64,000 nucleotides of DNA, taken from the IMG/VR virus record IMGVR_UViG_3300021964_009390, positions 1-64,000 of that record; one strand, given 5' to 3'. The notes beneath the pieces were generated by a model. The model was not told where the DNA came from, did no database searches, and saw only the letters and a program-made list of their open reading frames with translations. Positions 41,796 through 61,078 of the stretch are shown piece by piece. Numbering within the stretch: the stretch's first letter is position 1; each line of letters opens with the position of its first letter. Position numbers and translations under genes: made by a program.

Positions 41796-41808
41796 GTTTT
41801 ACTGTCTA

Positions 41809-42393: not shown

Positions 42394-42400
42394 TTAAGTT

Positions 42401-43402: not shown

Positions 43403-43407
43403 AATAT

Positions 43408-46057: not shown

Positions 46058-46071
46058 GTATATATATATGT

Positions 46072-46947: not shown

Positions 46948-46948
46948 T

Positions 46949-47602: not shown

Positions 47603-47619
47603 TTATTACAATTTGCAAT

Positions 47620-48243
47620 ATGAAAAATTATAAATATACAAAACAATGGTTCACATCTAAAGATTTAGAGCAGTTTTTAAAAATCGACCGGGAGAAAGAA
47701 TTGCATATTCTTGAAATTGGCTCATTTGAAGGTGAAAGTACAGTCTGGTTTCTTAACAATGTACTCCAACATTCAAAATCTACTATCACATGTATAGACC
47801 CGTGGGACAGTTATTCGCAGAATAGCAAAAGCTTTCAAAGTTACTCCAACCCAGAAAATGAATGGCATAATAGTGATAAGTATGACACATTCAAGCATAA
47901 TATAAAAGAGTCTGGGGTTGAAGAAAAGGTTTTAGTTAAAAGAGGATTATCTCATGAAATTTTACCGGAATTGCTTGTTGAGAACAACCAATATGACATC
48001 GTCTTTATAGATGGTAACCATGTAGCCCCATATGTACTAACAGACGCCATGTTTAGCTGGTACATGCTAAAAGATCGTGGGATAATGATATTTGATGATT
48101 ACTTGTGGAGACCTCAGCTTAATAAAGTCTTGACACCAAAACTGGCTGTAGATTCGTTTATAACCAACTTTCAAGATTATTGTGAGGTAATTTACGATGG
48201 CTACCGCAAGGCCATTAAAAAGGTAATGAGTGACAATGAATAA
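47620..48243 (+). CDS. Class I SAM methyltransferase (Methyltransf_24-like)
   Basis: LEIGSFEGEST, YDIVFIDGNH, IMIFDDYLW. Confidence 0.9.
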   Translation: MKNYKYTKQWFTSKDLEQFLKIDREKELHILEIGSFEGESTVWFLNNVLQHSKSTITCIDPWDSYSQNSKSFQSYSNPENEWHNSDKYDTFKHNIKESGVEEKVLVKRGLSHEILPELLVENNQYDIVFIDGNHVAPYVLTDAMFSWYMLKDRGIMIFDDYLWRPQLNKVLTPKLAVDSFITNFQDYCEVIYDGYRKAIKKVMSDNE

Positions 48244-48934
48244 AAAAACACTCATACTAACTGACAATTTACAAGCATACAAGCTAGCGGGTGAACTCAA
48301 CCAGTTGCACGGCGGTATTGATACATATCAATCACCTAATGGTACTATAGAAGGTATACCACATTTACATGTTCGAGATCAAGTAACATCAATTATTGAC
48401 AAATATGACCTTGTCTTATCTATACATTGCAAACAGATTTTCCCAGACGAACTAGTTATCGGTTCACGATGTGTAAATGTACATCCCGGGCTGAACCCAT
48501 ATAATAGAGGTTGGTTTCCACAGGTCTTTTCAATTATTAACGGTCTTCCCAGTGGGGTAACCATTCATGAAATTGATAACGAACTGGACCATGGACCGAT
48601 AATCGCTCAGAAGGAATACACAATACAACCCTGGGACACATCCGGGTCAGCATATGCGAAAATTATAGCTCTTGAAAAAGAATTGCTAATGGAACATTTT
48701 ACATCGATCAGAAATCGTACTTACAAGGCTATACCACCAGAAGAAGAAGGTAATCTCAATTATAAAAAAGATTTTAATAAGTTGAAACATATTGACATGA
48801 ACCAGCAAGGTACATTTGGTGAGTTCATAAACCGGCTCCGTGCACTCACTCATGATAATTATAACAACGCCTATTATATAGAACCTTCCGGTAAAAAGGT
48901 TTTTGTTAAACTCCAACTAGAGTTGGAAGGTTAA
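48230..48934 (+). CDS. dTDP-4-amino-4,6-dideoxyglucose formyltransferase (VioF/Rv3404c-like)
   Basis: LSIHCKQIFP, CVNVHPGLNPYNRGWFPQVFSI, GVTIHEID.ELDHGPII. Confidence 0.85.
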   Translation: MTMNKKTLILTDNLQAYKLAGELNQLHGGIDTYQSPNGTIEGIPHLHVRDQVTSIIDKYDLVLSIHCKQIFPDELVIGSRCVNVHPGLNPYNRGWFPQVFSIINGLPSGVTIHEIDNELDHGPIIAQKEYTIQPWDTSGSAYAKIIALEKELLMEHFTSIRNRTYKAIPPEEEGNLNYKKDFNKLKHIDMNQQGTFGEFINRLRALTHDNYNNAYYIEPSGKKVFVKLQLELEG

Positions 48935-49003
48935 TTAATTAGTCTATATTAACAACTTTGTAATAAAAGTTGCTAGATTGTATAAAATAACATAAATTAT
49001 ATT

Positions 49004-51052
49004 ATGAAAATAATACACCATGTCACTATGTGGGCCATGTCAGTAGGTACAGTTACCGGTGGAGAGTTGTGGTTCAACAACGGAAAAATGCTAGAAGGAG
49101 AAATACTAGAAGCGAACAACACTCACGTACTGTTCGCGCGCGCGTCCGATCTACAACAATTCAGATTCAGCAAAGAGCTACTGACACTAGACAGTCAAAA
49201 ATTAATAGAGCTATATTATAACACAAACAGATATGGTGAAATTCCACAGGTCAAAACACCGTTAGACGATCGAACATTACAAATCTACACCAATCGTATA
49301 GATCAATTGATCGAGAACCGTTTGAGAGGCCTGAAAAAGAGACCCACTGCAAAAGCTGATGATAATACATGGGTGAGAAGGGTGTATTTGACCACGATTG
49401 GTCGTATACCCAATAGACAAGAGGTCGCGGAGTATCTGAACGATAGAGACTCTCAAAAGAGGGACAAACTGATACAGAAGCTGCTGTCTGGTCCCGGTCA
49501 TGTGACACATCAATTGAACTGGCTGAGCGATTTGTTACGAGTCAAAGATCGTCTGGACGGAGTCAACATAAACGTAGGTGGTGTATACAGGGAATGGCTC
49601 CGACAGCAATTGCAAAACAATGTACCGTGGGACCAGTTTGTGAGAAGTTTGTTGGATAGTGAGGGTGATTTATTCGGTAACAATCCGGCCGCCGGTTATT
49701 ATCTACGAGACAGAGGCATGCAACAAGACAACATAGCGCACACTGTACAAATATTTTTAGGTACACGTCTCGAATGCGCCATGTGTCACAACCACCCGTT
49801 CGACAGATGGACACAAAAAGAGTTTTACGAGATGACCGCATTCACTAGCGGTGTTGGGGGAGTGACTAGAAGCGCTAGGAGGCAACCGTTGAGAGATTTG
49901 AATAGAATGATAAGCAGAGATGGTACACCCCTTGCAGGTAAGTTACAAAATTGGAGAAACGTAGTGAGAGATTCTATACAGTTTGGTGTAGACACAAACG
50001 GTACTGGTAAAATAAAATTGACAGATGAGTTTATGGAAAATGATGCCAAGCCAGGCGACACACTACATGCTAAAGCCATGTTCACACCACATACCTACAT
50101 AGACCCTGAGGATAAAAACCCTAGAAGTCTCACCATACTGGCAAAATGGTTGACTGATCGGAACAACCCGCGGTTCACCACCGTGATAGCCAATAGATTG
50201 TGGAAGAACGTATTTGGTGTAGGTGTAATAGAACCAGTCGACAATTTTATGGATAGCACCATCCCGGAAAACACAGACCTCATGTGGTTTATTGAAAGAA
50301 TATTAGTTAGTGTCAATTATGACATGAGAGAATTCCAACGAGTGTTGTTGAATACCAAGCTGTTCTCTAGAGAGAGCAAACCGACTGATTACGAGAGTCT
50401 GGAAACTTATGATTTTTCTGGACCAGTGTTACGTCGAATGACCGGTGAGCAACTATGGGATTCATTGGTCACTCTAGTATACAACAACATAGACACGAGT
50501 GACAGAGTGTACATACAAAATCAGTCTGCTGTGTATGTGAACATATACAACAAGTACAAGGATTGGAACGGTACAGCCATATATCAAGACCTGGTTCGGA
50601 TAGCTCAAGCCAACCCAGATCAGAGACGGTTGGAAGATTCATTCAAACAAGAGTCTAGCGACGTGAAACCGATACCAGACAGAGGTCTGATTCGAAGCAG
50701 CTATTTGTCGTATCCAGCACCAGGGGGTCACTTGATAAGGCAGTTTGGTGGTAGTGATAAATTGGCAATTGAGAACAGCAACAGTGAACCAAACACAACA
50801 CAAGTGTTAAACTTGTTGAACGGATTTGTAGAGAAAAATATATTGAACAACAAAAAGGCGGATTTTATCAAAAGCATGCAAGCTGAGAAAAACTCGGTCA
50901 AGCAAATTGAAGATGTGTACATGTCTGTGTTGGCACGTAAACCAACCAGTCAAGAGTTACGTGAGCTGAAAGATATACTAAAAGAAGAGAATGGATACAA
51001 ACACGTCGCATGGATATTGCTCAACACCCACGAGTTTATGTTTATACAGTAA
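49004..51052 (+). CDS. DUF1549/DUF1553 (PSD1/PSD2) protein with N-terminal signal and SHD1-like domain
   Basis: ADD.TWVRRVYL..IGRIP, FLGTRLECAMCHNHPFDRWTQKEFY, NPRFTTVIANRLW, RRMTGEQLWDS, QVL.LLN, W.LLNT.EF.F. Confidence 0.9.
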   Translation: MKIIHHVTMWAMSVGTVTGGELWFNNGKMLEGEILEANNTHVLFARASDLQQFRFSKELLTLDSQKLIELYYNTNRYGEIPQVKTPLDDRTLQIYTNRIDQLIENRLRGLKKRPTAKADDNTWVRRVYLTTIGRIPNRQEVAEYLNDRDSQKRDKLIQKLLSGPGHVTHQLNWLSDLLRVKDRLDGVNINVGGVYREWLRQQLQNNVPWDQFVRSLLDSEGDLFGNNPAAGYYLRDRGMQQDNIAHTVQIFLGTRLECAMCHNHPFDRWTQKEFYEMTAFTSGVGGVTRSARRQPLRDLNRMISRDGTPLAGKLQNWRNVVRDSIQFGVDTNGTGKIKLTDEFMENDAKPGDTLHAKAMFTPHTYIDPEDKNPRSLTILAKWLTDRNNPRFTTVIANRLWKNVFGVGVIEPVDNFMDSTIPENTDLMWFIERILVSVNYDMREFQRVLLNTKLFSRESKPTDYESLETYDFSGPVLRRMTGEQLWDSLVTLVYNNIDTSDRVYIQNQSAVYVNIYNKYKDWNGTAIYQDLVRIAQANPDQRRLEDSFKQESSDVKPIPDRGLIRSSYLSYPAPGGHLIRQFGGSDKLAIENSNSEPNTTQVLNLLNGFVEKNILNNKKADFIKSMQAEKNSVKQIEDVYMSVLARKPTSQELRELKDILKEENGYKHVAWILLNTHEFMFIQ

Positions 51053-51071
51053 ATTGAATCAAATTAGTACC

Positions 51072-51497
51072 ATGAAAAAACACGACAGTATAGATGCATC
51101 AATATTAAAAACATTACCTAACCCAACCACTGGTGCATATGAAATTAAAATAAAAATCCCAGAATTTACATTTTTAGGGGTCAAAGAACAACCGGATTTC
51201 GCAGATACATACCTGAGTTTTTACCCTAAAGACAAAATAATTGAGTTGAAAAGCCTTAAACAATATGTGTACCAATTGAGAGATATTGTTGTTTCATACG
51301 AGAGGTTGATTAATGTATTTTACGATCACGTAATGGGTGTTTATCAGCCTGAGAGACTTAGGGTTGTAATGGTGTTTAACCCGCGTGGTGGTATAACATC
51401 GAAATTGACTATAGATTCTGATTGGTCAGTCAGAGGCGGTGAAGAAAAATTTAAAGACTGGACTAACAAAAACGAACAGTGGAACATAACACTATAA
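51072..51497 (+). CDS. QueF type I-fold protein lacking the catalytic Cys
   Basis: LPNP..YEI.I..PEFTFLGVKEQPDFA..ELKSLK.Y....SYE..RGGI. The canonical CP..G.PDF is replaced. Confidence 0.75.
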   Translation: MKKHDSIDASILKTLPNPTTGAYEIKIKIPEFTFLGVKEQPDFADTYLSFYPKDKIIELKSLKQYVYQLRDIVVSYERLINVFYDHVMGVYQPERLRVVMVFNPRGGITSKLTIDSDWSVRGGEEKFKDWTNKNEQWNITL

Positions 51498-51505
51498 TAG
51501 TGTAA

Positions 51506-51907
51506 ATGGATAAAGATCTCCCGGATAATGTAGCGCCGAACCCACACTCACTACCATATGCGAGTAATATAGGTGCACCAGTAATTAAACCGGACCATAG
51601 TATCACTGGATGGAAGCATGGAGCAGTACACTCAGCTAACAAACACTACCAGGACCGGTTTGATGAATTGAAAAAACAATTCGAACAGCTAGCAGAAGAT
51701 TTTAAATGGAACGATATAATGTTCAACGCCGATTTTCGCTTGAAGCCAGTTATAGGTAACACATATTATTTGTACAAGAGACCCAGTCAGAACAAACACT
51801 ACATATCGTTGTTCGCCCCGCAGGAACGTGTTGGAGGATATGACAACTATGTAGGCGCTTTCCGCTTAAACTATGACAACAGGTGGGAAAAAATTACAAA
51901 TGATTAG
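51506..51907 (+). CDS. DUF2452-like protein
   Basis: LPYASNIGAP.I, F...PVIG.TYYLY.R, G.FRLN.D..W. Confidence 0.65.
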   Translation: MDKDLPDNVAPNPHSLPYASNIGAPVIKPDHSITGWKHGAVHSANKHYQDRFDELKKQFEQLAEDFKWNDIMFNADFRLKPVIGNTYYLYKRPSQNKHYISLFAPQERVGGYDNYVGAFRLNYDNRWEKITND

Positions 51908-52874
51908 CTAGCAATCTACGTGCTTGTTTCTCTTCATGCTCAATCATAAGATTGATCGCGTAGTCTTTTTGTTTGAGTTCGATGTCCCAGTCAATATGCA
52001 TGTTCTCTGTATAGAAACTCTCGTGTTTGTGTCGCCACAACGCTGGTGAATCAATAGCAAAATCTGTATGGGCTCGTGGGTTACCATTGGCACCACCCTC
52101 ACTGTAATGAAACAATGGATTCACATCATGAGCTTTCCATGTACTAGCACACACTCGGAACGCCTCTTTAGCGCCCCACGTACCTGGGTTACATGCATGA
52201 TGCAAGTTGTCAAATGTGATGGGTATACCAGTCTCTAGATGGATCAGCTCGAACAACATGTCGGGTGTCCATAGACCTTTGTCTTCGTTCTCTAGCACTA
52301 GCCGAGATTTGACTCGATCCGGAAGCTTGTGGTAGTTAGTTATGAATTCAGCAGCTATAGTTTCTGCATCACCGGTACTGCGACTCATGTGTATATTCAA
52401 GGGATACCAGTAAGATCTACTGTGTTCACCTGCCATACGATCCAGCAGCCATGCATGATGGTCCAACTCATTTATGGTGCGTCTCACAACTTCTGGATTG
52501 GCGCTACACAACACATTGAAATGATCCGGATGAAAACTGACACGAAAATCTTTGGGAGACTGTCTGGTCACAAAATGTTGTATCTCTGCAAACTTGTCGT
52601 CAATCAACGTGGCGTTAGGTAGGTCTCGTAAACCAACGTTGGCTTTGTCAAGATTGAACAACGGAAACAGCGTGCTACTGATTCGATAACCCCAGCCGTT
52701 ACTGAGCGCGAACCGCATGGTTTCGAGAGTGGTTGTGAGATTCTCTAGTGCACGTTCTCCTAGGATCTCTAGAGCATCCACACGTTCATGTTTCTCGAAC
52801 TGAGTGAATCTGAACGCGCGATGGTTAAATCCTTGTTTTTTTAACGCTAAACTAATGCAACATAGGTTATACAT
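51894..52874 (-). CDS. uvsE: UV damage endonuclease
   Basis: YRISS.LFP, RVSFHPDHFNVL.S, LNIH, RLVLENED, TFDNLHH, HYSE. Confidence 0.9.
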   Translation of the reverse strand: MYNLCCISLALKKQGFNHRAFRFTQFEKHERVDALEILGERALENLTTTLETMRFALSNGWGYRISSTLFPLFNLDKANVGLRDLPNATLIDDKFAEIQHFVTRQSPKDFRVSFHPDHFNVLCSANPEVVRRTINELDHHAWLLDRMAGEHSRSYWYPLNIHMSRSTGDAETIAAEFITNYHKLPDRVKSRLVLENEDKGLWTPDMLFELIHLETGIPITFDNLHHACNPGTWGAKEAFRVCASTWKAHDVNPLFHYSEGGANGNPRAHTDFAIDSPALWRHKHESFYTENMHIDWDIELKQKDYAINLMIEHEEKQARRLLANHL

Positions 52875-52887
52875 AATAAATAAGTAT

Positions 52888-53418
52888 ATGAGCATAAACC
52901 AAGACACGCAACTAATATGGGAGAATTACAACTATTCATTCGACAAAGATTCCATGATAAATCACGCGGTAAAAATGCACCAGAAACATGGTGCTGGGAT
53001 TGACGAGATAAAAGAAACATTGATGGCTGCGGCGATGTCCGGTGGTCCGGAACAAGCACATCATGTGGCGCAGTATTTAAAAAGTGATGAATTCACTAAC
53101 GAACTTAAAAATCGTTTACAGTCTCTAGATGATGAGATGATGCACGAGGAGCTTGACCGAGGAGACGAAGCTGGTGATTATACTGCGTTTTTGAAGGAGA
53201 TGGCACGAGAGCTGGTGAGAAACGACATGCCGGAGGAGGAAGCAATGGAAATTGTGTTGAGTCATCCATTTGAAGAAACATACGGTGAATATTTGAGAGT
53301 CAGAGGAGCAGCCGGTGTATACACAGCCGCTCAAAAGCACAAAGAACTAGCGGAAAAGTCCGGATATTACCATGAGGTTGACATGAACATGTTACAAAAT
53401 TGGAAGTATGTTAGCTAG
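52888..53418 (+). CDS. Putative virion protein (DTQLIWENY N-terminus)
   Basis: Late motif 5 nt upstream. Confidence 0.6.
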   Translation: MSINQDTQLIWENYNYSFDKDSMINHAVKMHQKHGAGIDEIKETLMAAAMSGGPEQAHHVAQYLKSDEFTNELKNRLQSLDDEMMHEELDRGDEAGDYTAFLKEMARELVRNDMPEEEAMEIVLSHPFEETYGEYLRVRGAAGVYTAAQKHKELAEKSGYYHEVDMNMLQNWKYVS

Positions 53419-54383
53419 TCTATATAATATTTAATTGTACTTTCTAACAGCTCATCAAAATTAGCGCTTGAAGACCAACCAAGTTCAGTCTTCAATTTGT
53501 TACAATCAACCGCGTACCGGTAGTCATGCCCCTTACGATCCGTTACAAATGTAATTTGCTGTTTATATGACATACCATCTTGTTTAGGTCTCAATCTATC
53601 TAGCAACCCACATATTTTGCTCACAAGGTCAATGTTACTCATCTCATGATCACCTCCAATATTATATGTTTCCCCGGTCAAACCTTTACGAAAGACCAGC
53701 TCGATGGCTCGGCAATGGTCTAATACATACAACCAGTCTCGTATGTTTTTACCGTCACCATACACTGGTATATTCCCACCTGTTAACGCGGTTTTCACCA
53801 CTGTAGGTATCAATTTTTCTACATGTTGATGGGGTCCAAAATTGTTACTACAACTGGTGATGACTGTGTCAATTCCATATGTACGTTGATAACTACGCAC
53901 CATCAAACCACCACTCGCTTTGCTGGCGCTGTAAGGGCTGTTAGGCGCAACTGGTGTATCCTCTGTGAACATACCTGTGTCACCTAAAGTACCATATACT
54001 TCATCGGTACTTACATAGTGAAACCTACCGGTACAATATTTCCGGAATGCTTCTAGTAACACTCCTGTACCATTCACATTTGTGGTGACAAATTGCAAAG
54101 GGTCTTCGATAGAGTTATCCACGTGACTCTCAGCCGCTAGATGTATGATAGAATCTATACCGTACTGTTGGATGGTGTATTCAACTTGCTGAGCATTGCA
54201 TATGTCACCTTTGACAAATGTGTATCTACCATTCAATTTGACTGAATCTAAATTGCTCAAGTCTCCTGCGTATGTCAGCTTGTCATAATTAACAAACCAC
54301 ATGTCATTACTATTGTTGATCAAATGCAATATCAAATTACTACCAATAAAACCGCACCCTCCAGTGATTAAAACATGTTTCAT
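53415..54383 (-). CDS. rmlB: dTDP-glucose 4,6-dehydratase
   Basis: ITGGCGFIGSN, DKLTYAG, HLAAESHVD, VSTDEVYG, YSASKAS, YGDG.NIRDWLYV, DRKGHD.RY. Confidence 0.95.
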   Translation of the reverse strand: MKHVLITGGCGFIGSNLILHLINNSNDMWFVNYDKLTYAGDLSNLDSVKLNGRYTFVKGDICNAQQVEYTIQQYGIDSIIHLAAESHVDNSIEDPLQFVTTNVNGTGVLLEAFRKYCTGRFHYVSTDEVYGTLGDTGMFTEDTPVAPNSPYSASKASGGLMVRSYQRTYGIDTVITSCSNNFGPHQHVEKLIPTVVKTALTGGNIPVYGDGKNIRDWLYVLDHCRAIELVFRKGLTGETYNIGGDHEMSNIDLVSKICGLLDRLRPKQDGMSYKQQITFVTDRKGHDYRYAVDCNKLKTELGWSSSANFDELLESTIKYYID

Positions 54384-54396
54384 AATAAATATATGT

Positions 54397-54918
54397 ATGT
54401 TAGAACGATTCGATAATCTATATGAAAAGCACCTTCCGGAGGAAAAAAAGAAAGGTTTAGACGGCAAAGCATGTTGGAAAGGATATCGACAACAGGGCAC
54501 CAAAAAGAAGGGTAACAAAACTGTCGACAACTGCGTGAAGGTCGGTGAGGGTTTATGGGCCAATATAAACAAGAAAAATAAGTCCGGTCGTAAATCAGCC
54601 AGCAAAGGAAGCAAAGCCTACAAAGCCGCTGTCAAAGCCGGAGACAAGCTAGAAGCCACCAAGGAAAGTATTGCTGCTGAGAAAAATGCACAATGCACTG
54701 GACCTACTAAAAAAGCCAGTAGCACCAGCAAAGGTAAAAAATGGATGAAATGTGTGAAAAGTGACAGCGGTGGTTACAAACGTATACACTGGGGTCAAAA
54801 AGGAGTCAAAGTGAGCGGCAAAGCAAACACCAAAAGACGTAAAAGCTTCAGAGCTCGTCACAAATGTAGCACGGCCAAAAGCAACACACCACGCGGACAA
54901 GCATGCAAGGACTGGTAG
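54397..54918 (+). CDS. Basic modular putative virion protein
   Basis: CWKGY..GTKKKG..VDNCV and GLWANIN modules; Lys-rich. Confidence 0.65.
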   Translation: MLERFDNLYEKHLPEEKKKGLDGKACWKGYRQQGTKKKGNKTVDNCVKVGEGLWANINKKNKSGRKSASKGSKAYKAAVKAGDKLEATKESIAAEKNAQCTGPTKKASSTSKGKKWMKCVKSDSGGYKRIHWGQKGVKVSGKANTKRRKSFRARHKCSTAKSNTPRGQACKDW

Positions 54919-55538
54919 TAACAGACGCTAGATTGCATGAGCAACCTCATTGCGAAAAAGCAGTAGCCGACTACACACCCACATTGCAAGATGTGGCCAT
55001 ATTCGATCAGAACGGATATGACATGTGCCCGGTGGAGCTGGAATATGCAAAAGCGAACGGTTTCATACACAGCAATCATCGTGTGAGTCACATAGCGTTA
55101 AGACAGGAGTGGATGACACATGAACCGGTCACAATAGGAGCACACTTCAATCATTGCAATCTATTCGAGCGCAAAGGGTACACAGGAGAAGCTAGACAAC
55201 AGCTGCACACATGGAGCAAACACAACGCGCTTGTGTGGAAGATAATAAAAATTCGTCCAAAATGGGGATTAGACTTCAGTGTAGATTATGCAGACAACGA
55301 TGGTAATGTGTTCGAGGTGTTACACTGGGAATGGGACAGCTTCGACTACAACGAAGTGAGACAGAAGCGAGACAAATACGAACCTTTCTTGTTAAGTACA
55401 GACTGGGATGACGCGGCTAAACAATTGTTGAAACGTAAAGACGAATGGCATTCATTAGATTTCTTTGCACAAAGTGACTGGAAGTGTAAATACTTTGGAA
55501 TAGAACCAGAACAATTTAAAATGGTATTATGGCAATAG
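54903..55538 (+). CDS. Conserved phage hypothetical protein
   Basis: FDQNGYD, FERKGY and PKWGLDFSVDY recognised as T4-like accessory motifs. Confidence 0.6.
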   Translation: MQGLVVTDARLHEQPHCEKAVADYTPTLQDVAIFDQNGYDMCPVELEYAKANGFIHSNHRVSHIALRQEWMTHEPVTIGAHFNHCNLFERKGYTGEARQQLHTWSKHNALVWKIIKIRPKWGLDFSVDYADNDGNVFEVLHWEWDSFDYNEVRQKRDKYEPFLLSTDWDDAAKQLLKRKDEWHSLDFFAQSDWKCKYFGIEPEQFKMVLWQ

Positions 55539-55948
55539 AACAAGAACATCAAGACGAATCAATACGCCCATGGGGTCATTACGAGATCCTGTTGGATGAA
55601 GAGTATTGCAAAGTGAAACGTATATATGTGAAGCCCGGTCAACGTCTGAGTTATCAGTATCATCACAAGAGGCAGGAAGCATGGACCGTGGTGAGCGGAG
55701 TCGCTAGAATCACCTTGAACGGTAACACAAGCGATTATGAACCAGGTCAAACTGTGTTGATACCACTAGGTGCTAAACATCGCATGGCCAACCCAGCAGA
55801 AGATCAGGACATGATACTGATCGAGGTGCAAACGGGTACATATTTTGGTGAGGATGACATAGTGAGAGTAGAAGATGACTACGATCGTCCGAAGAAACAT
55901 GTCAATGTGTGGAAACCTAAATGGGAATGGACAGATGAGGACCTTTAA
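55529..55948 (+). CDS. Mannose-6-phosphate isomerase type II-like cupin
   Basis: RPWGHY, VKRIYVKPGQRLSYQYHHKRQEAW, IEVQTG.YFGEDDIVR. Confidence 0.88.
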   Translation: MAIEQEHQDESIRPWGHYEILLDEEYCKVKRIYVKPGQRLSYQYHHKRQEAWTVVSGVARITLNGNTSDYEPGQTVLIPLGAKHRMANPAEDQDMILIEVQTGTYFGEDDIVRVEDDYDRPKKHVNVWKPKWEWTDEDL

Positions 55949-56381
55949 AAAATTTCATGAAAACCGAGAGGGTTGCCCAAAAGCAACACAGGACCTAGAA
56001 CTGAACACCAAGAACAGGAACGCCACAAGAGAAAACCACATGTACGGTCCGTTGAACCCGGCCATGCCCAGCAAAGATTACTGGCAAAAGATCGCTGACA
56101 AATGGGGCTCTAGTGTGGAAGAGGCCATGAACAGTCGATGTGCCAATTGTGTAGCGTTTGACAAATCCCCTCGTATGAAAGATTGCTTACCGATGTCTGA
56201 CGAGAAGATGCATTGGTCATATCACGACATGCCGGGGTTCGATCAAGACCCAGAGTTTGGCTATTGCTGGATGCATCACTTCAAATGTTTCAACGGCCGG
56301 ACTTGTGACACCTGGGCCACCGGCGGGCCTATAACAGATGATGAAACATCTAAAAAGTGGCAAGAAAAAAACCAGTCATGA
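55935..56381 (+). CDS. Putative virion protein (MRTFKKFHE N-terminus), Cys-rich
   Basis: CPKATQD, YGPLNP, CANCVAFD. Confidence 0.6.
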   Translation: MRTFKKFHENREGCPKATQDLELNTKNRNATRENHMYGPLNPAMPSKDYWQKIADKWGSSVEEAMNSRCANCVAFDKSPRMKDCLPMSDEKMHWSYHDMPGFDQDPEFGYCWMHHFKCFNGRTCDTWATGGPITDDETSKKWQEKNQS

Positions 56382-57604
56382 AAACGTTCAAACAATTTTT
56401 TTACGAAAACAGAGAGTATCAAGTAGATGACTTTCAGCAAGAAGAATATCTAGAGTATCAGAGCGAGTTTGTATATGATTATGAAGCCATGATGGGCTTA
56501 CCACATGATAAACTAGCCAGTATCATAACCAAAGCCGGTAACAAACGTTTCTCTGCAACCATTGATGGTGTGGATCCATCTGTTGATGGTACTGAGCATT
56601 ATTATGTCGTTACTGATCGTGACGTGTTGAAAAATATAGCGTCATTGATTGCTAGTACAGGTGAGCCACATCATGAGGAATTCGCCATGGGTGTTGGTAC
56701 TGGTGATAGTTTTGAATTCATGGTACGTTTACCCAAATCCGGTTTCACCGGTGAAGAGATTGGTGACATGCAAGTGTTTCTTGTAACACCAGGAGGTTCT
56801 GATCAGCTACATGCACTACTATCTCAAGTGAGAGAAGGTTTATGGACCAACATCAACGCCAAGAAAAAACGCGGAGGCAAGAGTGCCAAGAAAGGCAGCA
56901 AAGCTTACAAAGCAGCCAAGAAAGCTGGTGACAAGCTAGAAGCCACAAAAGAAAGTGTATGGAAACCGGGAGATTTAGGTGTTCAGAATTGGGGTGAGTA
57001 TGAAGCAGGTGGTCGGCATGCTGAACTAGGAGCCATCGAACCTCATATGGAGAAAATCCCAGGTCCGGATCGTGTGGTAGCGCACATGAACGGATTGCAG
57101 AATGAATACATGAGAGTGTTAAAAACCCGGAAATCCAACCCAGATGTGAAGGACAACTACAAGTATGTCCGCAACAATATAGATCAAGCCATACAGATGA
57201 TGAATCAGACGACAGGTGGAGAAACCGAATCAAGAAGAAGCATCATACAAGACATCCACATTGCAGGATTTGCAGCACGTAGATACATACGAGCAATTGA
57301 ATCAGGTGAAACTAATCAAGCTTATTACAAGAGATTGTTGAATCATCTGCGTGACGCGGCTGATGCCATGGAGGGATTGATCGAACAAGAGGTTGAAGGA
57401 GAACTTGGTGGATGGAATGTCAATGAAAATTTCAAGGACGGCAAGAAAAAAGGCAAGAGCCGTCCGGGTCGAGTCAAAAGAGCCGGGGCCAGTTGCAACG
57501 GCAGCGTCACAAGTTTACGTAAAAAGGCCAAAGCCGGTGGTGAGAAGGGCAAGATGTACCACTGGTGCGCCAACATGAAGAGTGGGAGGAAGAAGAAAAA
57601 ATAA
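56378..57604 (+). CDS. Modular putative virion polyprotein (MKTFKQFFYE N-terminus)
   Basis: Acidic domains alternate with basic modules EGLWTNIN... and ENFKDGKKKG... Confidence 0.65.
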   Translation: MKTFKQFFYENREYQVDDFQQEEYLEYQSEFVYDYEAMMGLPHDKLASIITKAGNKRFSATIDGVDPSVDGTEHYYVVTDRDVLKNIASLIASTGEPHHEEFAMGVGTGDSFEFMVRLPKSGFTGEEIGDMQVFLVTPGGSDQLHALLSQVREGLWTNINAKKKRGGKSAKKGSKAYKAAKKAGDKLEATKESVWKPGDLGVQNWGEYEAGGRHAELGAIEPHMEKIPGPDRVVAHMNGLQNEYMRVLKTRKSNPDVKDNYKYVRNNIDQAIQMMNQTTGGETESRRSIIQDIHIAGFAARRYIRAIESGETNQAYYKRLLNHLRDAADAMEGLIEQEVEGELGGWNVNENFKDGKKKGKSRPGRVKRAGASCNGSVTSLRKKAKAGGEKGKMYHWCANMKSGRKKKK

Positions 57605-57667
57605 TGATTAGACCAAGTTTAATTAATACTATAAATAGTATGGAAAAAAATTGCAATATCACTTGAA

Positions 57668-58390
57668 ATGAGATCAAAAAAACATATTTTAGTTTTAGGT
57701 GACTCACATGCAAATAAGTTTTTTAGCTCTACCAAACTAGCAACCGGGGCCCAGAAACAACCGGATAGAATAATAAACGCTTTACAACCTGACTTTAGAT
57801 TCGATACCGTGGTCTGCCCGGGCGCGACTGCTCAGGGTGCAGTAAATCCTACATCCAAAACAAAAGCACTTGAAACATTTAAAAAGAAATTGAGTAAAAT
57901 AAATCCAGACGATTATGATTACATTGCAATTATGTTGGGTGAAGTAGATTGTGGTTTCGTAATTTGGTATCGTGCGGAAAAATACTCGATATCGGTTGAG
58001 GAACAATTGAATTTGTCGGTAAACAATCTGTTTGAATTTATTCGGAATGAAGTGCTTTTAAAGTTTAAACCAAAACAAGTTATCGTTATGGGAAGTGTTT
58101 TGCCTACCATAAAAGACGATCAAGATTGGGGTGAAGTTTGTCATCTTAGAAGTTCCGTAAAAGCAACTCAACTCGAAAGAACAAATTTGACACTAAGATA
58201 CAATTGTATATTGAAAGAAGAGTCGTGTAAACTAGGTTATAATTATATTGATATTACAGATGAGACAATCGATAAACATACAGGTTTAATTGGTGACAAA
58301 TACATAAATAGTAACGAATTTGACCACCACCTGCCTTTCAAAAAAACATGGAAGTTTTTTTATACCAAATTAATTAAATTAACAAAATGA
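57668..58390 (+). CDS. SGNH/GDSL-like hydrolase or acyltransferase
   Basis: LVLGDSH, G.TAQG, GEVDC, DHH. Confidence 0.65.
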   Translation: MRSKKHILVLGDSHANKFFSSTKLATGAQKQPDRIINALQPDFRFDTVVCPGATAQGAVNPTSKTKALETFKKKLSKINPDDYDYIAIMLGEVDCGFVIWYRAEKYSISVEEQLNLSVNNLFEFIRNEVLLKFKPKQVIVMGSVLPTIKDDQDWGEVCHLRSSVKATQLERTNLTLRYNCILKEESCKLGYNYIDITDETIDKHTGLIGDKYINSNEFDHHLPFKKTWKFFYTKLIKLTK

Positions 58391-58496
58391 AAACATTTAA
58401 ACAATATTAGATATGAAATACAAATTTACAAAAAATTGGTTCGATGACTCAGCAATAAAAAAAATAACATATAAGTTGCGGATTAGTCAAAATACC

Positions 58497-58504
58497 TATA
58501 AATA
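58497..58504 (+). promoter_or_regulatory. Canonical T4-type late promoter TATAAATA upstream of DUF1501
   Basis: Exact match, 8 nt before the ATG. Confidence 0.6.
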
Positions 58505-58512
58505 TATAGTAT

Positions 58513-59781
58513 ATGAATGATTTAAGCCGCCGCGAATTTGTAAGTACAGTTGCCAAAAGCTGTTTAGGAGTGAGCGCCATACTGAGCGCTCAAGATTTAT
58601 TAGCAATCAAACCCACCGGGCAGATACCAACCGCTCGGAATGTTATATTTTTATACATGGCAGGAGGCATGACTCACATCGACACGTTCGACCCAAAACC
58701 GGAGAACAGTGACGTGATGGGTGAAACAACTGCCATTGACACTACAGCGGACGGGGTACAGATAGGCAACTGGTTACCCAACACCGCCAAACAGATGCAC
58801 AACGCAAGTTTGATACGTACATTGTCGTCCAATCAAGGTGCACATGCACAAGCCAACTATTTGTTACACACCAGCTACCAACGCCGCGGCACGATCGTGC
58901 ATCCAACCATGGGTGCATGGGTGAGCAAACAGACACCCAAACTGAATCGATCGTTACCATCTAACGTGAGAATCAACGGAGGTAGCGACATATTAGGTTC
59001 CGGTTATTTGGAGAAAAAACACGGACCGTTACCATTGGGTAACCCCAACGCAGGTATACAAAATGTGTCACAGGCCAAGTATCTGGACGAGACCATGTAC
59101 AACAAACGGATGGACATATCCAGCAAATTCAACAAAAATTTCTTAGACATGTTCCCACAAAAGCAAGTACGTGCATACACTGATTTATATGATGATGCCA
59201 TCCGGTTGATGAAAAGCACAGATCTTGAAGCGTTCGATCTGACAAAAGAAGACCAAGCCACTCGAGACATGTACGGTACCAACAGTTTTGGTCAGGGCTG
59301 CCTATTAGCTAGACGGTTGGTTGAGACTGGTGTACGTTATGTCGAGGTGCAGCTAGGTGGTTGGGACATGCACAACGATGTGTTTGGTAACATGGAGACA
59401 CGAGGTGCTACATTGGACAATGGATTGGCTTCGTTGTTACAAGATTTGAACCGTCGTGGTCTGTTGAGCTCCACACTAGTTGTTGTGGCGAGTGAATTTG
59501 GTCGTACACCAGAGGTCAAAGCAGGCCGCGTGGGACGTGACCATCACCCATCTGCATTCAGCGCCATGTTGGCCGGAGGAGGAGTCAAAGGAGGTTACGT
59601 ACATGGCAAGAGCGACAAGCGTGGTCACTATGTAGAAGAGAAAGGTGTGAAAATGGAAGATCTGAACGCCACGATTGCTTACATGATGGGAATGGACATC
59701 ACTGAAACAATCTATTCTCCAAGTGGCAGACCATTTAAAATTGCTAATGCGGGTGAGGTTGTAACTGACATTTTAGCATAA
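58513..59781 (+). CDS. DUF1501 protein with twin-arginine (Tat) signal
   Basis: LSRREFV, VIFLYMAGGMTHIDTFDPKP, FGQGCLLARRLVETGV..VEV..GGWD.H, SEFGRTP, GRDHHP, GGGVKGG..G.SD. Confidence 0.93.
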   Translation: MNDLSRREFVSTVAKSCLGVSAILSAQDLLAIKPTGQIPTARNVIFLYMAGGMTHIDTFDPKPENSDVMGETTAIDTTADGVQIGNWLPNTAKQMHNASLIRTLSSNQGAHAQANYLLHTSYQRRGTIVHPTMGAWVSKQTPKLNRSLPSNVRINGGSDILGSGYLEKKHGPLPLGNPNAGIQNVSQAKYLDETMYNKRMDISSKFNKNFLDMFPQKQVRAYTDLYDDAIRLMKSTDLEAFDLTKEDQATRDMYGTNSFGQGCLLARRLVETGVRYVEVQLGGWDMHNDVFGNMETRGATLDNGLASLLQDLNRRGLLSSTLVVVASEFGRTPEVKAGRVGRDHHPSAFSAMLAGGGVKGGYVHGKSDKRGHYVEEKGVKMEDLNATIAYMMGMDITETIYSPSGRPFKIANAGEVVTDILA

Positions 59782-59789: not shown

Positions 59790-60215
59790 ATGCACGACAA
59801 AGACCACCACCTGATATGGGAATCATATTTTGATGAGACTGTAGCCACACCTAAAAACATTGAACGTGTGAGGTCCACATTGAACGATCCGGACCTGCAA
59901 GAACATGAACGACAGCTCATAATAGACACGTTACGCGAGCTAGAGAGACTAGCCACAACACAAGACATCAAAACTGTCAAGCAGAGCATCATGGACAAGC
60001 TGGGCAAGATGCTAGGACGTGAGCGAGTCAATGAACAGGGTAACTATGCCCGGATTGTGGCGGATGAAGAAAAGTTTTTAGAAATAGCGTACAAGTATTA
60101 CGGAGACATGGAAGAAGCCGAGCTGAAATTCCACCACTATGTACTGGAGGAGTTGCTAGAGATGGACGAGCTGACACGTCGCGAGTATCAAGGCCAAGGA
60201 CCACAGCGAGACTAA
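59790..60215 (+). CDS. Putative virion protein (DHHLIWESY N-terminus)
   Basis: Late motif 5 nt upstream. Confidence 0.6.
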   Translation: MHDKDHHLIWESYFDETVATPKNIERVRSTLNDPDLQEHERQLIIDTLRELERLATTQDIKTVKQSIMDKLGKMLGRERVNEQGNYARIVADEEKFLEIAYKYYGDMEEAELKFHHYVLEELLEMDELTRREYQGQGPQRD

Positions 60216-60216
60216 C

Positions 60217-60519
60217 ATGCATAACGGTACAGACATACGGAGCATATATGATATCTACTCCGGTAACAGCTCGTTGATTACCGAGTCTAAAGAGCAACCA
60301 GGTGAGATACCTGAGCTAGGTATTCGAGTGATACGTAACGAACATGGTGATAATGATGGTGACAGATATTATGAAACGTGGGAAGTATATCCCATAGATA
60401 ACACATCTGGTACTGGAGCACCATTGGATTGGGACTACGCCGGAGGGACTGAAACCATTGACGAGGTGGTAGCCAGAGTCAAAATGAATTTCAAAACAAG
60501 AGGAACACCAACATTATGA
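60217..60519 (+). CDS. Putative virion protein
   Basis: DIRSIYDIY..LITE N-terminus; in an operon with its neighbours. Confidence 0.5.
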   Translation: MHNGTDIRSIYDIYSGNSSLITESKEQPGEIPELGIRVIRNEHGDNDGDRYYETWEVYPIDNTSGTGAPLDWDYAGGTETIDEVVARVKMNFKTRGTPTL

Positions 60520-61043
60520 AAGATAAAGATCAACAATTAATATGGGAATCATACATTCGAGAGAATGAATATGGACCCAGTGGAGCACCTAGTATCAATG
60601 TATCAGATTGGAAATTAGAATCATGGTACAAACAAGACGATTGGGATGACAATCCAAACCCATGGGACCGGTATGTTGATGACGTGCTAGGTGACATATA
60701 TCAAGATATCCAAGAATATGGAGTAGAGTCTGACCGAGTGTATGTCGCGTTTTTCGGTCCACCTCGAGGAACTGCTGATTACGAGCAATGGACCGACCCG
60801 GGTATTGTGGTGGCTTTTGGAAACAATTCAGAAGAATACGGAGGAGACACGTTCAATTCGAAAGGTATATTTGTTGATAATGATGGAGAAGGTGAGAGTT
60901 TTGTATTACCATCACAACAACTAGAAGAATTGCTCAAAGTTAACAACCGAGCAATAGACGATGAAGTCACTAGTGACGAAGACTACAAGACTTGGGACCC
61001 ATACGGTCCAGAAGGTGTCGTGAGTAGAAGCGATTTTTACTGA
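60516..61043 (+). CDS. Acidic putative virion protein (DQQLIWESY N-terminus)
   Basis: Shares its N-terminal motif with the gene at 59790. Confidence 0.6.
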   Translation: MKDKDQQLIWESYIRENEYGPSGAPSINVSDWKLESWYKQDDWDDNPNPWDRYVDDVLGDIYQDIQEYGVESDRVYVAFFGPPRGTADYEQWTDPGIVVAFGNNSEEYGGDTFNSKGIFVDNDGEGESFVLPSQQLEELLKVNNRAIDDEVTSDEDYKTWDPYGPEGVVSRSDFY

Positions 61044-61078
61044 GTAAACATATAAGGAGGTACACCAACCAAACATAC

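What the first reader, a model, noticed from the sequence alone, without database searches (positions are those of the whole stretch)
49004..59781. Phage-borne DUF1549/DUF1553 + DUF1501 pair: an enigmatic PVC envelope module captured by a virus
Seen: both partners are full length and apparently exported (N-terminal hydrophobic signal; Tat SRREF), and the CxxCH motif (CAMCH) is retained. They lie 7.5 kb apart with different promoter types: sigma70-like TTGCTA-17-TAAATT at 48970-48998 for the first, canonical late TATAAATA for DUF1501. Known: these families occur as adjacent pairs, massively expanded in Planctomycetes and Verrucomicrobia, with unknown function; DUF1501 is alkaline-phosphatase/sulfatase-like. 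Inference: retention of both halves after separation implies selection for a two-subunit periplasmic complex useful to the phage (envelope remodelling, receptor masking, phosphate/sulfate scavenging). I do not know of a described phage role. This is the strongest candidate here for an undescribed system and a minimal model for the family.
Basis: partly seen in the sequence, partly recalled or inferred. Interest (0 to 1): 0.86.

Follow-up and report, generated by a model that had tools for sequence, protein, structure and literature searches.

The report
Host-derived periplasmic gene pair in phage
A large marine phage carries both halves of an enigmatic two-gene envelope module (DUF1549/DUF1553 plus DUF1501) taken from Verrucomicrobia-type bacteria. 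The pair is kept under strong selection across a whole clade of related phages, but what it does is still unknown.

Summary
ORF A (49004-51052) is a PSCyt2/DUF1549 + PSD1/DUF1553 protein with an invariant CAMCH. ORF B (58513-59781) is a full-length DUF1501 protein with a twin-arginine signal. They lie 7,460 bp apart on a 222-kb phage contig that has a gp23-type head module.

Three details are wrong or weak:
- A's signal peptide is unusually poor in this copy.
- The "sigma-70" promoter scores below chance-level matches.
- A and B do not have different promoter types. Both have the same GTTGC-N19/20-ATAAAT element just before the start codon.

The pair is not peculiar to this phage. All 19 closest IMG/VR relatives carry both genes, adjacent in about half. 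A second viral group also has the pair, and the two groups form one viral clade. The nearest cellular pairs are adjacent operons in Verrucomicrobiales. The phage A and B trees are congruent, and dN/dS is 0.01-0.06, including after the split. The split is a lineage-specific rearrangement confirmed in independent assemblies, so the contig is not chimeric.

B has an alkaline-phosphatase-superfamily fold without the sulfatase formylglycine motif. A's main body has no solved structural analogue. The best reading is a host-derived periplasmic two-protein module, probably acting on glycan-linked esters. Its chemistry is unproven. It is a new member of a known kind, of moderate interest.

The parts
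49004..51052 (+). Gene A: 682-aa PSCyt2 (DUF1549) + PSD1 (DUF1553) protein
   Evidence: Pfam E 1.4e-41 and 7.6e-30. Intact homologues of 55-61% identity occur in all 19 IMG/VR relatives. AlphaFold2 gives pLDDT 87.6, and the alpha-helical body has no PDB analogue.
49004..49063 (+). Weak N-terminal signal-like segment of A (residues 1-20)
   Evidence: Best 10-residue hydropathy is 1.08 against 2.05-3.72 in 18 IMG/VR relatives. The 96%-identical relative has a canonical Sec signal. This is the most divergent part of the gene and includes a 12-nt insertion.
49061..49183 (+). Small beta-barrel domain of A (residues ~20-60)
   Evidence: Four strands in the model. Foldseek finds local matches to Hfq/Sm and to Sla1 homology domain 1 (2hbp, TM 0.58). 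No Pfam match. The domain is conserved in all phage copies and present in only some bacterial partners.
49775..49789 (+). CAMCH (CxxCH) motif, residues 258-262 of A, within the conserved CAxCH-x-HPFD-x-W stretch
   Evidence: It is the only CxxCH in A. C258, A259, C261, H262 and P265 are invariant in 48 phage and bacterial sequences.
58513..59781 (+). Gene B: 422-aa DUF1501 protein, alkaline-phosphatase-superfamily fold
   Evidence: Pfam E 1.6e-115, covering profile positions 1-390 of 390. pLDDT 87.7. Best PDB fold matches are sulfatases, LtaS and alkaline phosphatase, E about 1e-7, TM about 0.4. All 42 columns invariant across 55 phage and bacterial sequences are, by definition, kept in this copy.
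58525..58539 (+). Twin-arginine (Tat) motif SRREF, residues 5-9 of B
   Evidence: Read from the sequence. R6, R7 and F9 are invariant in 19 phage copies. R6 is invariant and R7 and F9 are at least 90% conserved when bacterial copies are included.
48969..48997 (+). Upstream element of A: GTTGC-N19-ATAAAT, continuing to T at 48998, which lies 5 nt before the ATG
   Evidence: It is conserved in the 96% relative L194, and the ATAAAT part also in L185.
58475..58504 (+). Upstream element of B: GTTGC-N19-ATAAAT (58475-58503), overlapping the TATAAATA octamer (58497-58504), which ends 8 nt before the ATG
   Evidence: It is conserved in L190, and in variant form in L188 and L189.
51053..58512 (.). Block of accessory genes separating A from B: QueF-like, DUF2452, UvdE (-), NDP-sugar dehydratase/epimerase (-), cupin/ManC-like, and several genes of unknown function
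   Evidence: Pfam and PHROGs. In the 208-kb relative L185 the pair is adjacent, and homologues of these genes lie upstream of the pair.
57605..58472 (+). About 870-bp insertion carrying ORF 57668-58390 (240 aa, no family match), bounded by AAAAAATAA repeats
   Evidence: It is absent from L190, L188 and L189, where the homologue of gene 56357-57604 abuts the region upstream of B.

Best explanation
Genes A and B are the two halves of a bacterial PSCyt2/PSD1-DUF1501 operon.

Origin and history:
- The operon was captured once, as an adjacent A-then-B pair, from a Verrucomicrobiales-like bacterium by an ancestor of a large clade of marine phages. These phages have genomes of 200-240 kb and gp23-type capsids.
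- Every sampled descendant has kept the pair under strong purifying selection.
- In the window's sublineage a rearrangement placed a block of accessory genes between the two. Each half now has the same kind of short upstream element (GTTGC-N19/20-ATAAAT) next to its start codon, so they are probably still expressed together.

Proposed working (inferred):
- During infection B folds in the cytoplasm with its metal cofactor and is exported by the Tat pathway.
- A is exported separately. Its relatives have Sec signal peptides.
- In the host periplasm the two act together, as the host's own pairs do. B is an alkaline-phosphatase-superfamily metalloenzyme working on a phosphate or sulfate ester. A is a large helical protein with an invariant Cys-x-x-Cys-His site and a small beta-barrel, serving as the binding or redox partner.
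- The substrate is most likely carbohydrate-linked.
- The phage benefits by sustaining or re-tooling host envelope and glycan metabolism, as an auxiliary gene pair.

Shown: identity, viral setting, origin, co-inheritance, selection, export motifs, and B's fold. Inferred: complex formation, chemistry, substrate, and the benefit to the phage.
For: - Domains and motifs.
- Phage setting: head module. Identical A on contigs of at least 200 kb.
- Conservation of both genes: all 19 IMG/VR relatives have both genes intact, on the same strand, A before B. Ten have gaps of 77 bp or less. They are the only genes shared between window 44-64 kb and the +/-10-kb flanks of all relatives.
- Abundance: more than 120 database clusters at 71% identity or above, on contigs up to 240 kb.
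- Wider viral distribution: a second viral group (B 50-54%, A 36-39% identity) is mostly adjacent and forms one clade with group 1, local support 99.
- Cellular relatives: the closest are 43-51% identical (B) and overwhelmingly Verrucomicrobiales. In most of them a PSCyt2/PSD1 gene ends within about 100 bp upstream of DUF1501.
- Phylogeny: phage B (SH-aLRT 99) and phage A (100) are each one clade next to the same bacterial group. The phage subtrees are congruent. A and B distance matrices correlate, r = 0.92, Mantel p <= 0.001.
- Selection: dN/dS is 0.04-0.055 for A and 0.014-0.055 for B in five close pairs. Inside the split lineage it is 0.062 for A (0.034 for the mature part) and 0.021 for B, at dS about 0.45.
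- The split is real.
- Shared upstream element.
- Fold of B.
- Carbohydrate link: the pair sits in a glycan and sulfation gene island here and in close relatives. Verrucomicrobial partner proteins carry carbohydrate-binding modules and neighbour sulfatases (PMC5615132; a sulfatase lies next to the L096 pair). DUF1800-DUF1501 pairs were co-transferred with chitin synthase, epimerase and sulfotransferase genes (PMC5122149).
Against: - No experiment or solved structure exists for either family.
- B lacks the C/S-x-P-x-R formylglycine motif. Its nucleophile could not be assigned: the profile comparison with a sulfatase aligned only the C-terminal half, at 39% probability.
- Physical interaction between A and B was not tested.
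- The window's A has a poor signal peptide, so its export is uncertain.
- Other viral groups carry DUF1501 in tandem copies with no PSCyt2/PSD1 partner detected within 4 kb upstream. DUF1501 may therefore work alone.
- Bacterial neighbourhoods of the nearest pairs are heterogeneous: ABC-2 transporter, PSCyt1-LRR protein, amino-acid or sugar-acid enzymes, CstA.
- In many group-1 relatives the pair sits next to ribonucleotide reductase and DNA polymerase genes, not glycan genes.
- The host is inferred only from gene ancestry and GC content.
Confidence: 0.5

Rival explanations
1. Envelope or receptor remodelling. The pair is part of the phage's surface-glycan programme. It trims or alters sulfated or phosphorylated envelope glycans, either to block superinfection or to stop progeny adsorbing to dead cells. 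It is not there to feed metabolism.
For: Flanking genes here include glycosyltransferases (GT2, GT10, GT25, GT47-like, GT1/DUF5672), two sulfotransferases, NeuB, sugar formyl-, methyl- and aminotransferase genes, and an NDP-sugar dehydratase. Close relatives have Sulfotransfer_2, GT61 and Laminin_G_3 proteins beside the pair. Both proteins carry export signals. DUF1800-DUF1501 pairs travel with polysaccharide-synthesis genes in Proteobacteria (PMC5122149).
Against: The neighbourhood is hypervariable, and no glycan gene is shared with the 19 IMG/VR relatives. Many of those have the pair next to replication and nucleotide genes. No receptor or glycan substrate is known. This reading overlaps with the best explanation in mechanism and differs only in the benefit to the phage.
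Confidence: 0.25
2. Redox module, as Kamneva et al. proposed for the bacterial pairs. A is a haem-c protein passing electrons to or from B, and B is a Tat-exported cofactor enzyme. The phage uses the module to adjust periplasmic electron flow.
For: The CxxCH is invariant, followed by a second conserved His. Sec-type signals on A's relatives fit cytochrome c maturation, and the Tat signal on B fits a cofactor-bearing enzyme. The proposal is in PMC3542564. PSCyt1 or cytochrome c proteins lie beside some of the nearest bacterial pairs.
Against: A has no cytochrome c fold match or Pfam cytochrome domain. The phage copies and the nearest bacterial partners lack the PSCyt1 cytochrome domain. B's fold is that of hydrolases and transferases, not oxidoreductases.
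Confidence: 0.15
3. The two genes no longer work together in this phage. After the split B functions alone, and A is on its way to a different role or to loss.
For: The genes are 7.46 kb apart with separate upstream elements. A's signal peptide is degraded in this copy only. Other viral lineages keep DUF1501 without a detectable partner.
Against: A is still under strong purifying selection inside the split lineage: dN/dS is 0.062, or 0.034 without the signal region. All invariant residues are retained. Both genes share the same upstream motif. A and B co-vary across 79 loci.
Confidence: 0.08
4. Artefact: a chimeric assembly or a misclassified bacterial contig, so that no phage really carries both genes.
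For: The sequence comes from a metagenome assembly. The exact pair was not found in 50,697 deposited phage genomes.
Against: The A-side junction is reproduced in two independent Logan assemblies, and with variation in another sample. The B-side junction is reproduced in three other assemblies. The same contig has a phage head module. Dozens of other viral contigs carry both genes.
Confidence: 0.02

Closest known systems
DUF1501 + PSCyt/PSD gene module of Planctomycetes, Verrucomicrobia and Lentisphaerae (Kamneva et al. 2012, PMC3542564; He et al. 2017, PMC5615132)
   Same: The Pfam domains are the same: PSCyt2, PSD1 and DUF1501. The ancestral gene order is the same, with the partner directly upstream of DUF1501. 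DUF1501 has a twin-arginine signal. The CxxCH is invariant. The nearest homologues are such pairs in Verrucomicrobiales.
   Different: The pair is encoded by a virus. It is split by 7.5 kb in this genome. It has no PSCyt1 cytochrome domain and no carbohydrate-binding module. It carries an N-terminal small beta-barrel that only some bacterial partners have. There is a single copy rather than tens of paralogues. GC content is shifted towards the phage's.
DUF1800-DUF1501 operons of Proteobacteria, co-transferred with chitin synthase genes (Goncalves et al. 2016, PMC5122149)
   Same: A Tat-signal DUF1501 enzyme is paired with a large protein of unknown function. The pair moves horizontally as a unit, together with sugar-modifying genes (epimerase, sulfotransferase).
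   Different: The partner is DUF1800, not PSCyt2/PSD1. Any relationship between the two partner families was not tested here. The setting is bacterial, not viral.
Type I (formylglycine) sulfatases, alkaline phosphatase and LtaS: the alkaline phosphatase superfamily
   Same: B's predicted fold matches them best, with Foldseek probability 1.0 and E down to 1.6e-7. Pfam gives a weak Phosphodiest hit. Conserved Asp/His clusters (D285-x-H287, D343-H344-H345) sit where such enzymes bind metal. The positional assignment is inferred.
   Different: TM-scores are only about 0.4 and identity is 8-15%. There is no C/S-x-P-x-R motif. No sequence-level match to any solved structure was found. The catalytic nucleophile is unassigned.
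Periplasmic nutrient-acquisition auxiliary genes of marine cyanophages (pstS, phoA); comparison from general knowledge, not tested here
   Same: Both are host-derived genes for exported periplasmic proteins, carried by large marine phages with T4-type capsids and conserved across a phage clade.
   Different: Those genes have known functions and respond to phosphate stress. Here the function is unknown, two genes are co-inherited, and the presumed host phylum is different.

Membership tests
PVC DUF1501 + PSCyt2/PSD1 module | One protein with a full-length DUF1501 domain above Pfam's gathering score | tested here: met
   386.8 bits against a cut-off of 27, covering profile positions 1-390 of 390.
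PVC DUF1501 + PSCyt2/PSD1 module | A partner protein with PSCyt2 (DUF1549) followed by PSD1 (DUF1553) | tested here: met
   143.1 and 104.5 bits against cut-offs of 29.8 and 28.5.
PVC DUF1501 + PSCyt2/PSD1 module | The two genes are adjacent in this genome, with the partner directly upstream of DUF1501. This is typical of the module but not obligatory: Kamneva et al. note DUF1501 genes without partners. | tested here: not met
   The genes are 7,460 bp apart, with at least 10 ORFs between them.
PVC DUF1501 + PSCyt2/PSD1 module | The two genes descend from, and are co-inherited as, an adjacent partner-then-DUF1501 pair | tested here: met
   The pair is adjacent in 10 of the 19 IMG/VR relatives, in the 208-kb close relative L185 and in most group-2 contigs. 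The trees are congruent and the distance matrices correlate, r = 0.92. The nearest bacterial homologues are adjacent pairs.
PVC DUF1501 + PSCyt2/PSD1 module | A twin-arginine signal on the DUF1501 protein | tested here: met
   SRREF at residues 5-9, followed by a hydrophobic stretch. It is invariant in the phage copies.
PVC DUF1501 + PSCyt2/PSD1 module | A CxxCH motif in PSCyt2 | tested here: met
   CAMCH at residues 258-262, invariant in 48 sequences.
c-type cytochrome | CxxCH within a recognisable cytochrome c domain or fold | tested here: not met
   The motif is present, but there is no cytochrome Pfam hit and no PDB fold match for the domain; the best whole-protein E-value is 0.34.
c-type cytochrome | Covalently bound haem | not testable with these tools
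   This needs a haem stain or mass spectrometry of the exported protein.
Type I sulfatase (formylglycine-dependent) | Alkaline-phosphatase-like alpha/beta core | tested here: met
   Top Foldseek hits are steroid sulfatase, sulfamidase and arylsulfatase A, with probability 1.0.
Type I sulfatase (formylglycine-dependent) | The C/S-x-P-x-R motif that is converted to formylglycine | tested here: not met
   There is no such motif anywhere in B. B is therefore not filed as a type I sulfatase.
Alkaline phosphatase superfamily (broad) | Conserved metal-binding Asp/His residues and a nucleophile at the canonical positions | tested here: inconclusive
   H55, H111, D285, H287, E328, R331, R342 and H344 are invariant, and D57 and D343 are at least 90% conserved. 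The profile alignment to a sulfatase covers only the C-terminal half at 39% probability, and model coordinates could not be inspected.
Phage auxiliary (host-derived) gene | Encoded inside a bona fide phage genome | tested here: met
   The same contig carries gp23, scaffold, protease and head-closure genes. The junctions are reproduced independently.
Phage auxiliary (host-derived) gene | The phage copies nest among cellular homologues of one bacterial lineage | tested here: met
   Each phage clade is single and lies next to Verrucomicrobiota sequences. The root is not inferred, and the bacterial sample is the best 80 hits only.
Phage auxiliary (host-derived) gene | Maintained by purifying selection in phages | tested here: met
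   dN/dS is 0.014-0.062.
Phage auxiliary (host-derived) gene | Expressed during infection and beneficial to the phage | not testable with these tools
   There is no cultured host or phage, and no transcriptome was available here.
T4-type late promoter | TATAAATA about 10 nt upstream of the transcription start, enriched before late genes | tested here: inconclusive
   The octamer is present before B, but it is not enriched in the window. The looser NTAAATA is enriched 6.5-fold before start codons, usually only 5 nt away. That would imply leaderless transcripts or a different role for the motif.

The most novel reading that the evidence does not exclude
A whole clade of abundant marine large phages, probably infecting pelagic Verrucomicrobiales, depends on a self-sufficient two-protein periplasmic machine: a Sec-exported CxxCH helical protein plus a Tat-exported alkaline-phosphatase-like enzyme. 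Its chemistry would be new, neither classical sulfatase nor phosphatase, and it would act on envelope or dissolved sulfated or phosphorylated glycans. The compact, highly conserved phage versions would then give the first experimental handle on the most expanded unknown gene pair of PVC bacteria.
Probability: 0.25. Interest if true: 0.75.

Novelty: new member of a known kind. Interest (0 to 1): 0.5.

Why it matters
DUF1501-PSCyt/PSD pairs are among the most duplicated genes of unknown function in Planctomycetes and Verrucomicrobia.

A phage lineage has carried one such pair since before its copies diverged to about 50% (B) and 37% (A) identity, with dN/dS below 0.07. That says three things:
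- The two genes form a functional unit.
- The unit works without the extra cytochrome or carbohydrate-binding domains seen in many bacterial versions.
- It pays off within a single infection cycle.

The finding also marks a large, uncultured group of marine phages with a likely Verrucomicrobiales host. And it offers short, well-conserved sequences for expression and structural work.

It does not reveal the function. Similar minimal pairs exist in bacteria, so the gain is real but moderate.

Tried and rejected
- Deposited phage genomes (INPHARED, tblastn): no match for A or B. This collection was no help.
- Sequence search of PDB with profiles of A and B: nothing, even at E = 1.
- Fold search for A: only local hits to the small N-terminal barrel, plus weak phycobilisome-linker-like helices. 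Nothing matched the body.
- Pfam on A's N-terminal domain alone: no family. My recollection that it resembles SHD1 rests only on a TM 0.58 local fold hit.
- Profile alignment of DUF1501 to a neighbouring bacterial sulfatase, to map catalytic residues: only the C-terminal half aligned, at 39% probability. No nucleophile was assigned.
- Sigma-70 and terminator scans: at chance level. The exact TATAAATA count was not significant.
- Looking for a conserved promoter in front of A or B in the 19 IMG/VR relatives: none found.
- Looking for a conserved third gene: a DUF5824-like gene lies between or just after the pair in many relatives, but it is absent from the window.
- Bacterial neighbourhoods as a clue to function: heterogeneous.
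- Capsid-based search, to show that the pair-bearing contigs share the window's capsid: none of the pair-bearing relatives' contigs appear among the 80 listed of more than 600 hits, so it was uninformative.
- Names in public databases: only 'DUF1501 domain-containing protein [bacterium]' and similar, with no taxon.
- Literature: no paper on a phage-borne pair.
- Rejected explanations: chimeric contig, pseudogenes, and a misclassified bacterial contig.

Full report
**What is there.** The window is the first 64 kb of IMG/VR contig IMGVR_UViG_3300021964_009390, which is 222,461 bp long.
- It opens with a phage head module: head-closure protein, maturation protease, scaffold, and a gp23-type major capsid protein with Pfam Gp23 E 5e-88.
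- The capsid protein is at most 34% identical to that of any deposited phage.
- ORF A (49004-51052, +, 682 aa) hits PSCyt2/DUF1549 and PSD1/DUF1553. ORF B (58513-59781, +, 422 aa) hits DUF1501 over the whole profile.
- A contains one CxxCH, CAMCH at residues 258-262. B begins MNDLSRREF.
- The genes are 7,460 bp apart.

**Details that do not hold.**
- A's N-terminus is only weakly hydrophobic, with a best 10-residue hydropathy of 1.08. The 18 IMG/VR relatives aligned in A2 score 2.05-3.72 and have canonical Sec signal peptides. A 96%-identical copy and most other full-length close database homologues also have good signal peptides. This segment is the most divergent part of the gene. One public gene call starts A at M9.
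- The proposed sigma-70 promoter matches only 8 of 12 consensus positions. That is fewer than each of the 42 hits the scan lists for this region, and those hits are themselves at chance level.
- The exact TATAAATA octamer is not enriched in the window.
- What is enriched is NTAAATA directly before start codons. Of 86 occurrences, 24 lie in the 4.3% of sequence that precedes starts, and 13 end exactly 5 nt before the start codon.
- A has a one-mismatch version at that spacing, and B has the motif 8 nt before the ATG. Both also share GTTGC 19-20 nt further upstream, a pattern found 5 times in the window against 1.1 expected.
- These upstream regions are conserved in the closest relatives.

The two genes therefore carry the same kind of control element, not different ones.

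**Conservation in relatives.**
- A search of IMG/VR with B found 19 other viral contigs. tblastn showed that every one also encodes A (55-61% identity) upstream of B (67-74% identity) on the same strand, with both reading frames intact.
- The two genes are 77 bp or less apart in ten of these contigs. In the others, 600-1,800 bp are intercalated. The insert is either a DUF5824-like gene or, in two contigs, a second DUF1501 paralogue.
- Within +/-10 kb, A and B are the only genes the window shares with all of these contigs.
- The large protein database holds more than 120 clusters of each protein at 57-98% identity. Many lie on contigs of 200-240 kb, and some come from Tara Oceans samples.
- A profile scan of IMG/VR found at least 160 DUF1501-encoding stretches.
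  - A second group (B 50-54%, A 36-39%) mostly has the adjacent pair. It forms a single clade with the first group, excluding bacteria, with FastTree local support 99.
  - A third group (B about 42%) has a shorter PSCyt2/PSD1 gene directly upstream of DUF1501.
  - More distant viral DUF1501 genes occur as tandem paralogues, with no partner found within the 4-kb flanks examined.
- UniProt already lists a DUF1501 protein from an uncultured Caudovirales phage.

**Origin.**
- In one genome per species of the GTDB collection, the best matches to B are 43-51% identical. They are overwhelmingly Verrucomicrobiales and Akkermansiaceae metagenome-assembled genomes, many of them marine, plus a few Planctomycetota.
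- In most of them a PSCyt2/PSD1 gene ends within about 100 bp upstream of DUF1501. The nearest ones have the same minimal PSCyt2+PSD1 architecture as the phage protein.
- In maximum-likelihood trees the phage B proteins form one clade (SH-aLRT 99) and the phage A proteins form one clade (100). Each lies next to the same set of Verrucomicrobiota sequences.
- The phage subtrees of A and B agree on all seven terminal groupings.
- Pairwise distances of A and B correlate across 79 loci, r = 0.92, Mantel p <= 0.001.
- GC content is shifted towards the phage's: A 0.43 and B 0.47 against a bacterial median of 0.57. Some marine Verrucomicrobiales loci have the phage's own GC, 0.38-0.43.

The simplest history is a single capture of an adjacent operon from a Verrucomicrobiales-like host, followed by long vertical inheritance. 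The tree root is not inferred and only the best 80 bacterial loci were sampled, so this is well supported but not proven.

**Selection.** For five closely related phage pairs, dN/dS is 0.04-0.055 for A and 0.014-0.055 for B.

**The split.**
- In the closest long relative (L185, a 208,738-bp contig, A 82% and B 86% identical) the pair is adjacent, 49 bp apart, directly after the tmRNA homologue. Homologues of the genes that separate A and B in the window lie upstream of the pair there.
- The split state is nevertheless real.
  - Two independent assemblies reproduce the junction A-QueF-DUF2452-UvdE.
  - A different sample has A (96% identical) followed by UvdE.
  - That same sample has the homologue of gene 56357-57604 followed by B (98% identical).
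  - Two further assemblies show the same B-side junction.
- The window also has an insertion of about 870 bp carrying ORF 57668-58390, bounded by AAAAAATAA repeats. The 98%, 88% and 88% relatives lack it.
- Inside the split lineage, dN/dS is 0.062 for A (0.034 without the signal region) and 0.021 for B, at dS about 0.45.

Both halves therefore stayed under selection after separation. A chimeric assembly is excluded.

**Structure.**
- B was modelled with pLDDT 87.7. Its best PDB fold matches are steroid sulfatase, sulfamidase, arylsulfatase A, lipoteichoic acid synthase and alkaline phosphatase, with probability 1.0, TM about 0.4 and 8-15% identity.
- B has no C/S-x-P-x-R motif, so it is not a formylglycine sulfatase.
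- Residues H55, H111, D285, H287, E328, R331, R342 and H344 are invariant across 55 phage and bacterial sequences. They could not be mapped onto known catalytic positions.
- A was modelled with pLDDT 87.6. It has a small N-terminal beta-barrel resembling Sm/SH3-like domains, and a large helical body with no solved analogue.
- Neither protein has a sequence relative in the PDB.

**How it probably works.** The export signals place both proteins in the host periplasm: Tat for B, and Sec for A in relatives.
- There they most likely act as the host's own pairs do. B would be a metal-dependent enzyme on a phosphate or sulfate ester, and A its binding or redox partner.
- A carbohydrate-linked substrate is favoured by three lines of evidence.
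  - The genomic setting is a glycan and sulfation gene island, with several glycosyltransferases, two sulfotransferases, NeuB, sugar formyl-, methyl- and aminotransferase genes, and an NDP-sugar dehydratase.
  - Published observations report that verrucomicrobial partner proteins carry carbohydrate-binding modules and neighbour sulfatases (PMC5615132).
  - DUF1800-DUF1501 pairs move together with chitin synthase, epimerase and sulfotransferase genes (PMC5122149).
- My rough confidence by step:
  - host-derived, co-inherited, selected pair: about 0.95;
  - acting together in the periplasm: about 0.6;
  - ester chemistry on glycans: about 0.3.
- The rivals are receptor or envelope remodelling, a redox module as first proposed by Kamneva et al. 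(PMC3542564), and functional uncoupling after the split.

**Unexplained.**
- It is unclear why the window's A has a degraded signal peptide while the rest of the protein is under strong constraint. Co-export with B through Tat is one possibility, not tested here.
- It is unclear why the NTAAATA motif sits only 5 nt from start codons.

**Comparison and novelty.** Each protein is a clear member of its Pfam family. The pair is a member of the PVC DUF1501-PSCyt/PSD module, with adjacency lost secondarily in this genome. The new elements are the viral setting, the breadth and age of the viral clade, and the strength of selection. No paper in the searchable library describes these, although database entries for phage DUF1501 proteins exist. 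I rate it a new member of a known kind, with interest of about 0.5.

Noticed in passing
window 32277-32660 (+): The phage encodes a full-length tmRNA (ARAGORN; Rfam RF00023, 90 bits). In the close relative L185 the tmRNA homologue lies directly upstream of the adjacent A-B pair, so about 16 kb separates them only in the window's lineage.
   Followed up: partly
window, upstream of 13 or more genes (e.g. 1537, 1850, 12567, 23854, 27103, 29161, 31646(-), 44133, 45290, 59790): The motif NTAAATA (often GACTAAATAA) ends exactly 5 nt before the start codon. It is 6.5-fold concentrated in the 60 nt before start codons. If it is a T4-like late -10 element, the transcripts would be nearly leaderless. 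Otherwise it is a translation-initiation signal.
   Followed up: partly
window 14893-19690 (+), 19687-20535 (+), 5766-8228 (-): The phage carries a PrkA / DUF444 / SpoVR trio, which is a bacterial stress and starvation operon. It also carries NeuB (sialic-acid-type synthase) and a ClpB-like double AAA+ protein. ClpB-like homologues (36-40% identity, full-length matches) also lie 2-9 kb from the pair, mostly downstream of B, in the relatives where the gene falls within the flank.
   Followed up: no
window 39028-48934 and 59790-63945: There is a large island of glycan synthesis and sulfation genes around the pair. It includes GT25, a GT47-like gene, GT10, two Sulfotransfer_2 genes (41166-42393), DUF6492, a LOG-like gene, inorganic pyrophosphatase, a DegT-like aminotransferase, a methyltransferase, a formyltransferase ending 70 bp before A, and DUF5672+GT1 after B. 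This suggests the phage makes or alters sulfated glycans.
   Followed up: partly
window 57605-58472: An insertion of about 870 bp carries a 240-aa ORF with no family match and its own TATAAATA. It is bounded by AAAAAATAA repeats. Three close relatives lack it, and in them the preceding gene abuts the region upstream of B. It may be a small mobile cassette.
   Followed up: partly
window 50991-51497 (+) and 11621-12535 (+): A QueF-like protein and a GTP cyclohydrolase I-like protein are present. This hints at a 7-deazaguanine (preQ0-type) DNA or tRNA modification pathway. The QueF-like ORF overlaps the end of gene A by 62 nt.
   Followed up: no
L002:9420-9998, L005:8445-9998, L019:8217-9998, L006:11269-12015 and others: In at least 9 of the 19 IMG/VR relatives, a variable-length gene lies between A and B or directly after B. 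It has a DUF5824-like region and a lysine-rich C-terminus. It is absent from the window and may be an accessory third component.
   Followed up: partly
L002:13222-20804 and the equivalent regions of 11 other relatives: In the 67-74% relatives the pair lies next to class I ribonucleotide reductase, a PHP domain plus a DnaE-type Pol III alpha polymerase, and an RNase T-like exonuclease. A DnaE-type replicase is unusual for phages with gp23-type capsids. Whether the window's phage has one is unknown.
   Followed up: no
L015:8703-9980 (also L018), and L258-L273: Some viral contigs carry two or three DUF1501 paralogues in tandem. In L015 and L018 the extra copy (33% identity) lies between A and B. 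In the more distant groups the tandem copies lie beside PD-(D/E)XK nuclease and DnaB genes, with no PSCyt2/PSD1 partner within 4 kb.
   Followed up: partly
L017 and L020, about 15-40 nt upstream of gene A: The sequence ends like the 3' end of a tRNA gene (…GGTTCAACTCCCGCCACCTCCACCA) just before A. This was not checked with a tRNA finder.
   Followed up: no
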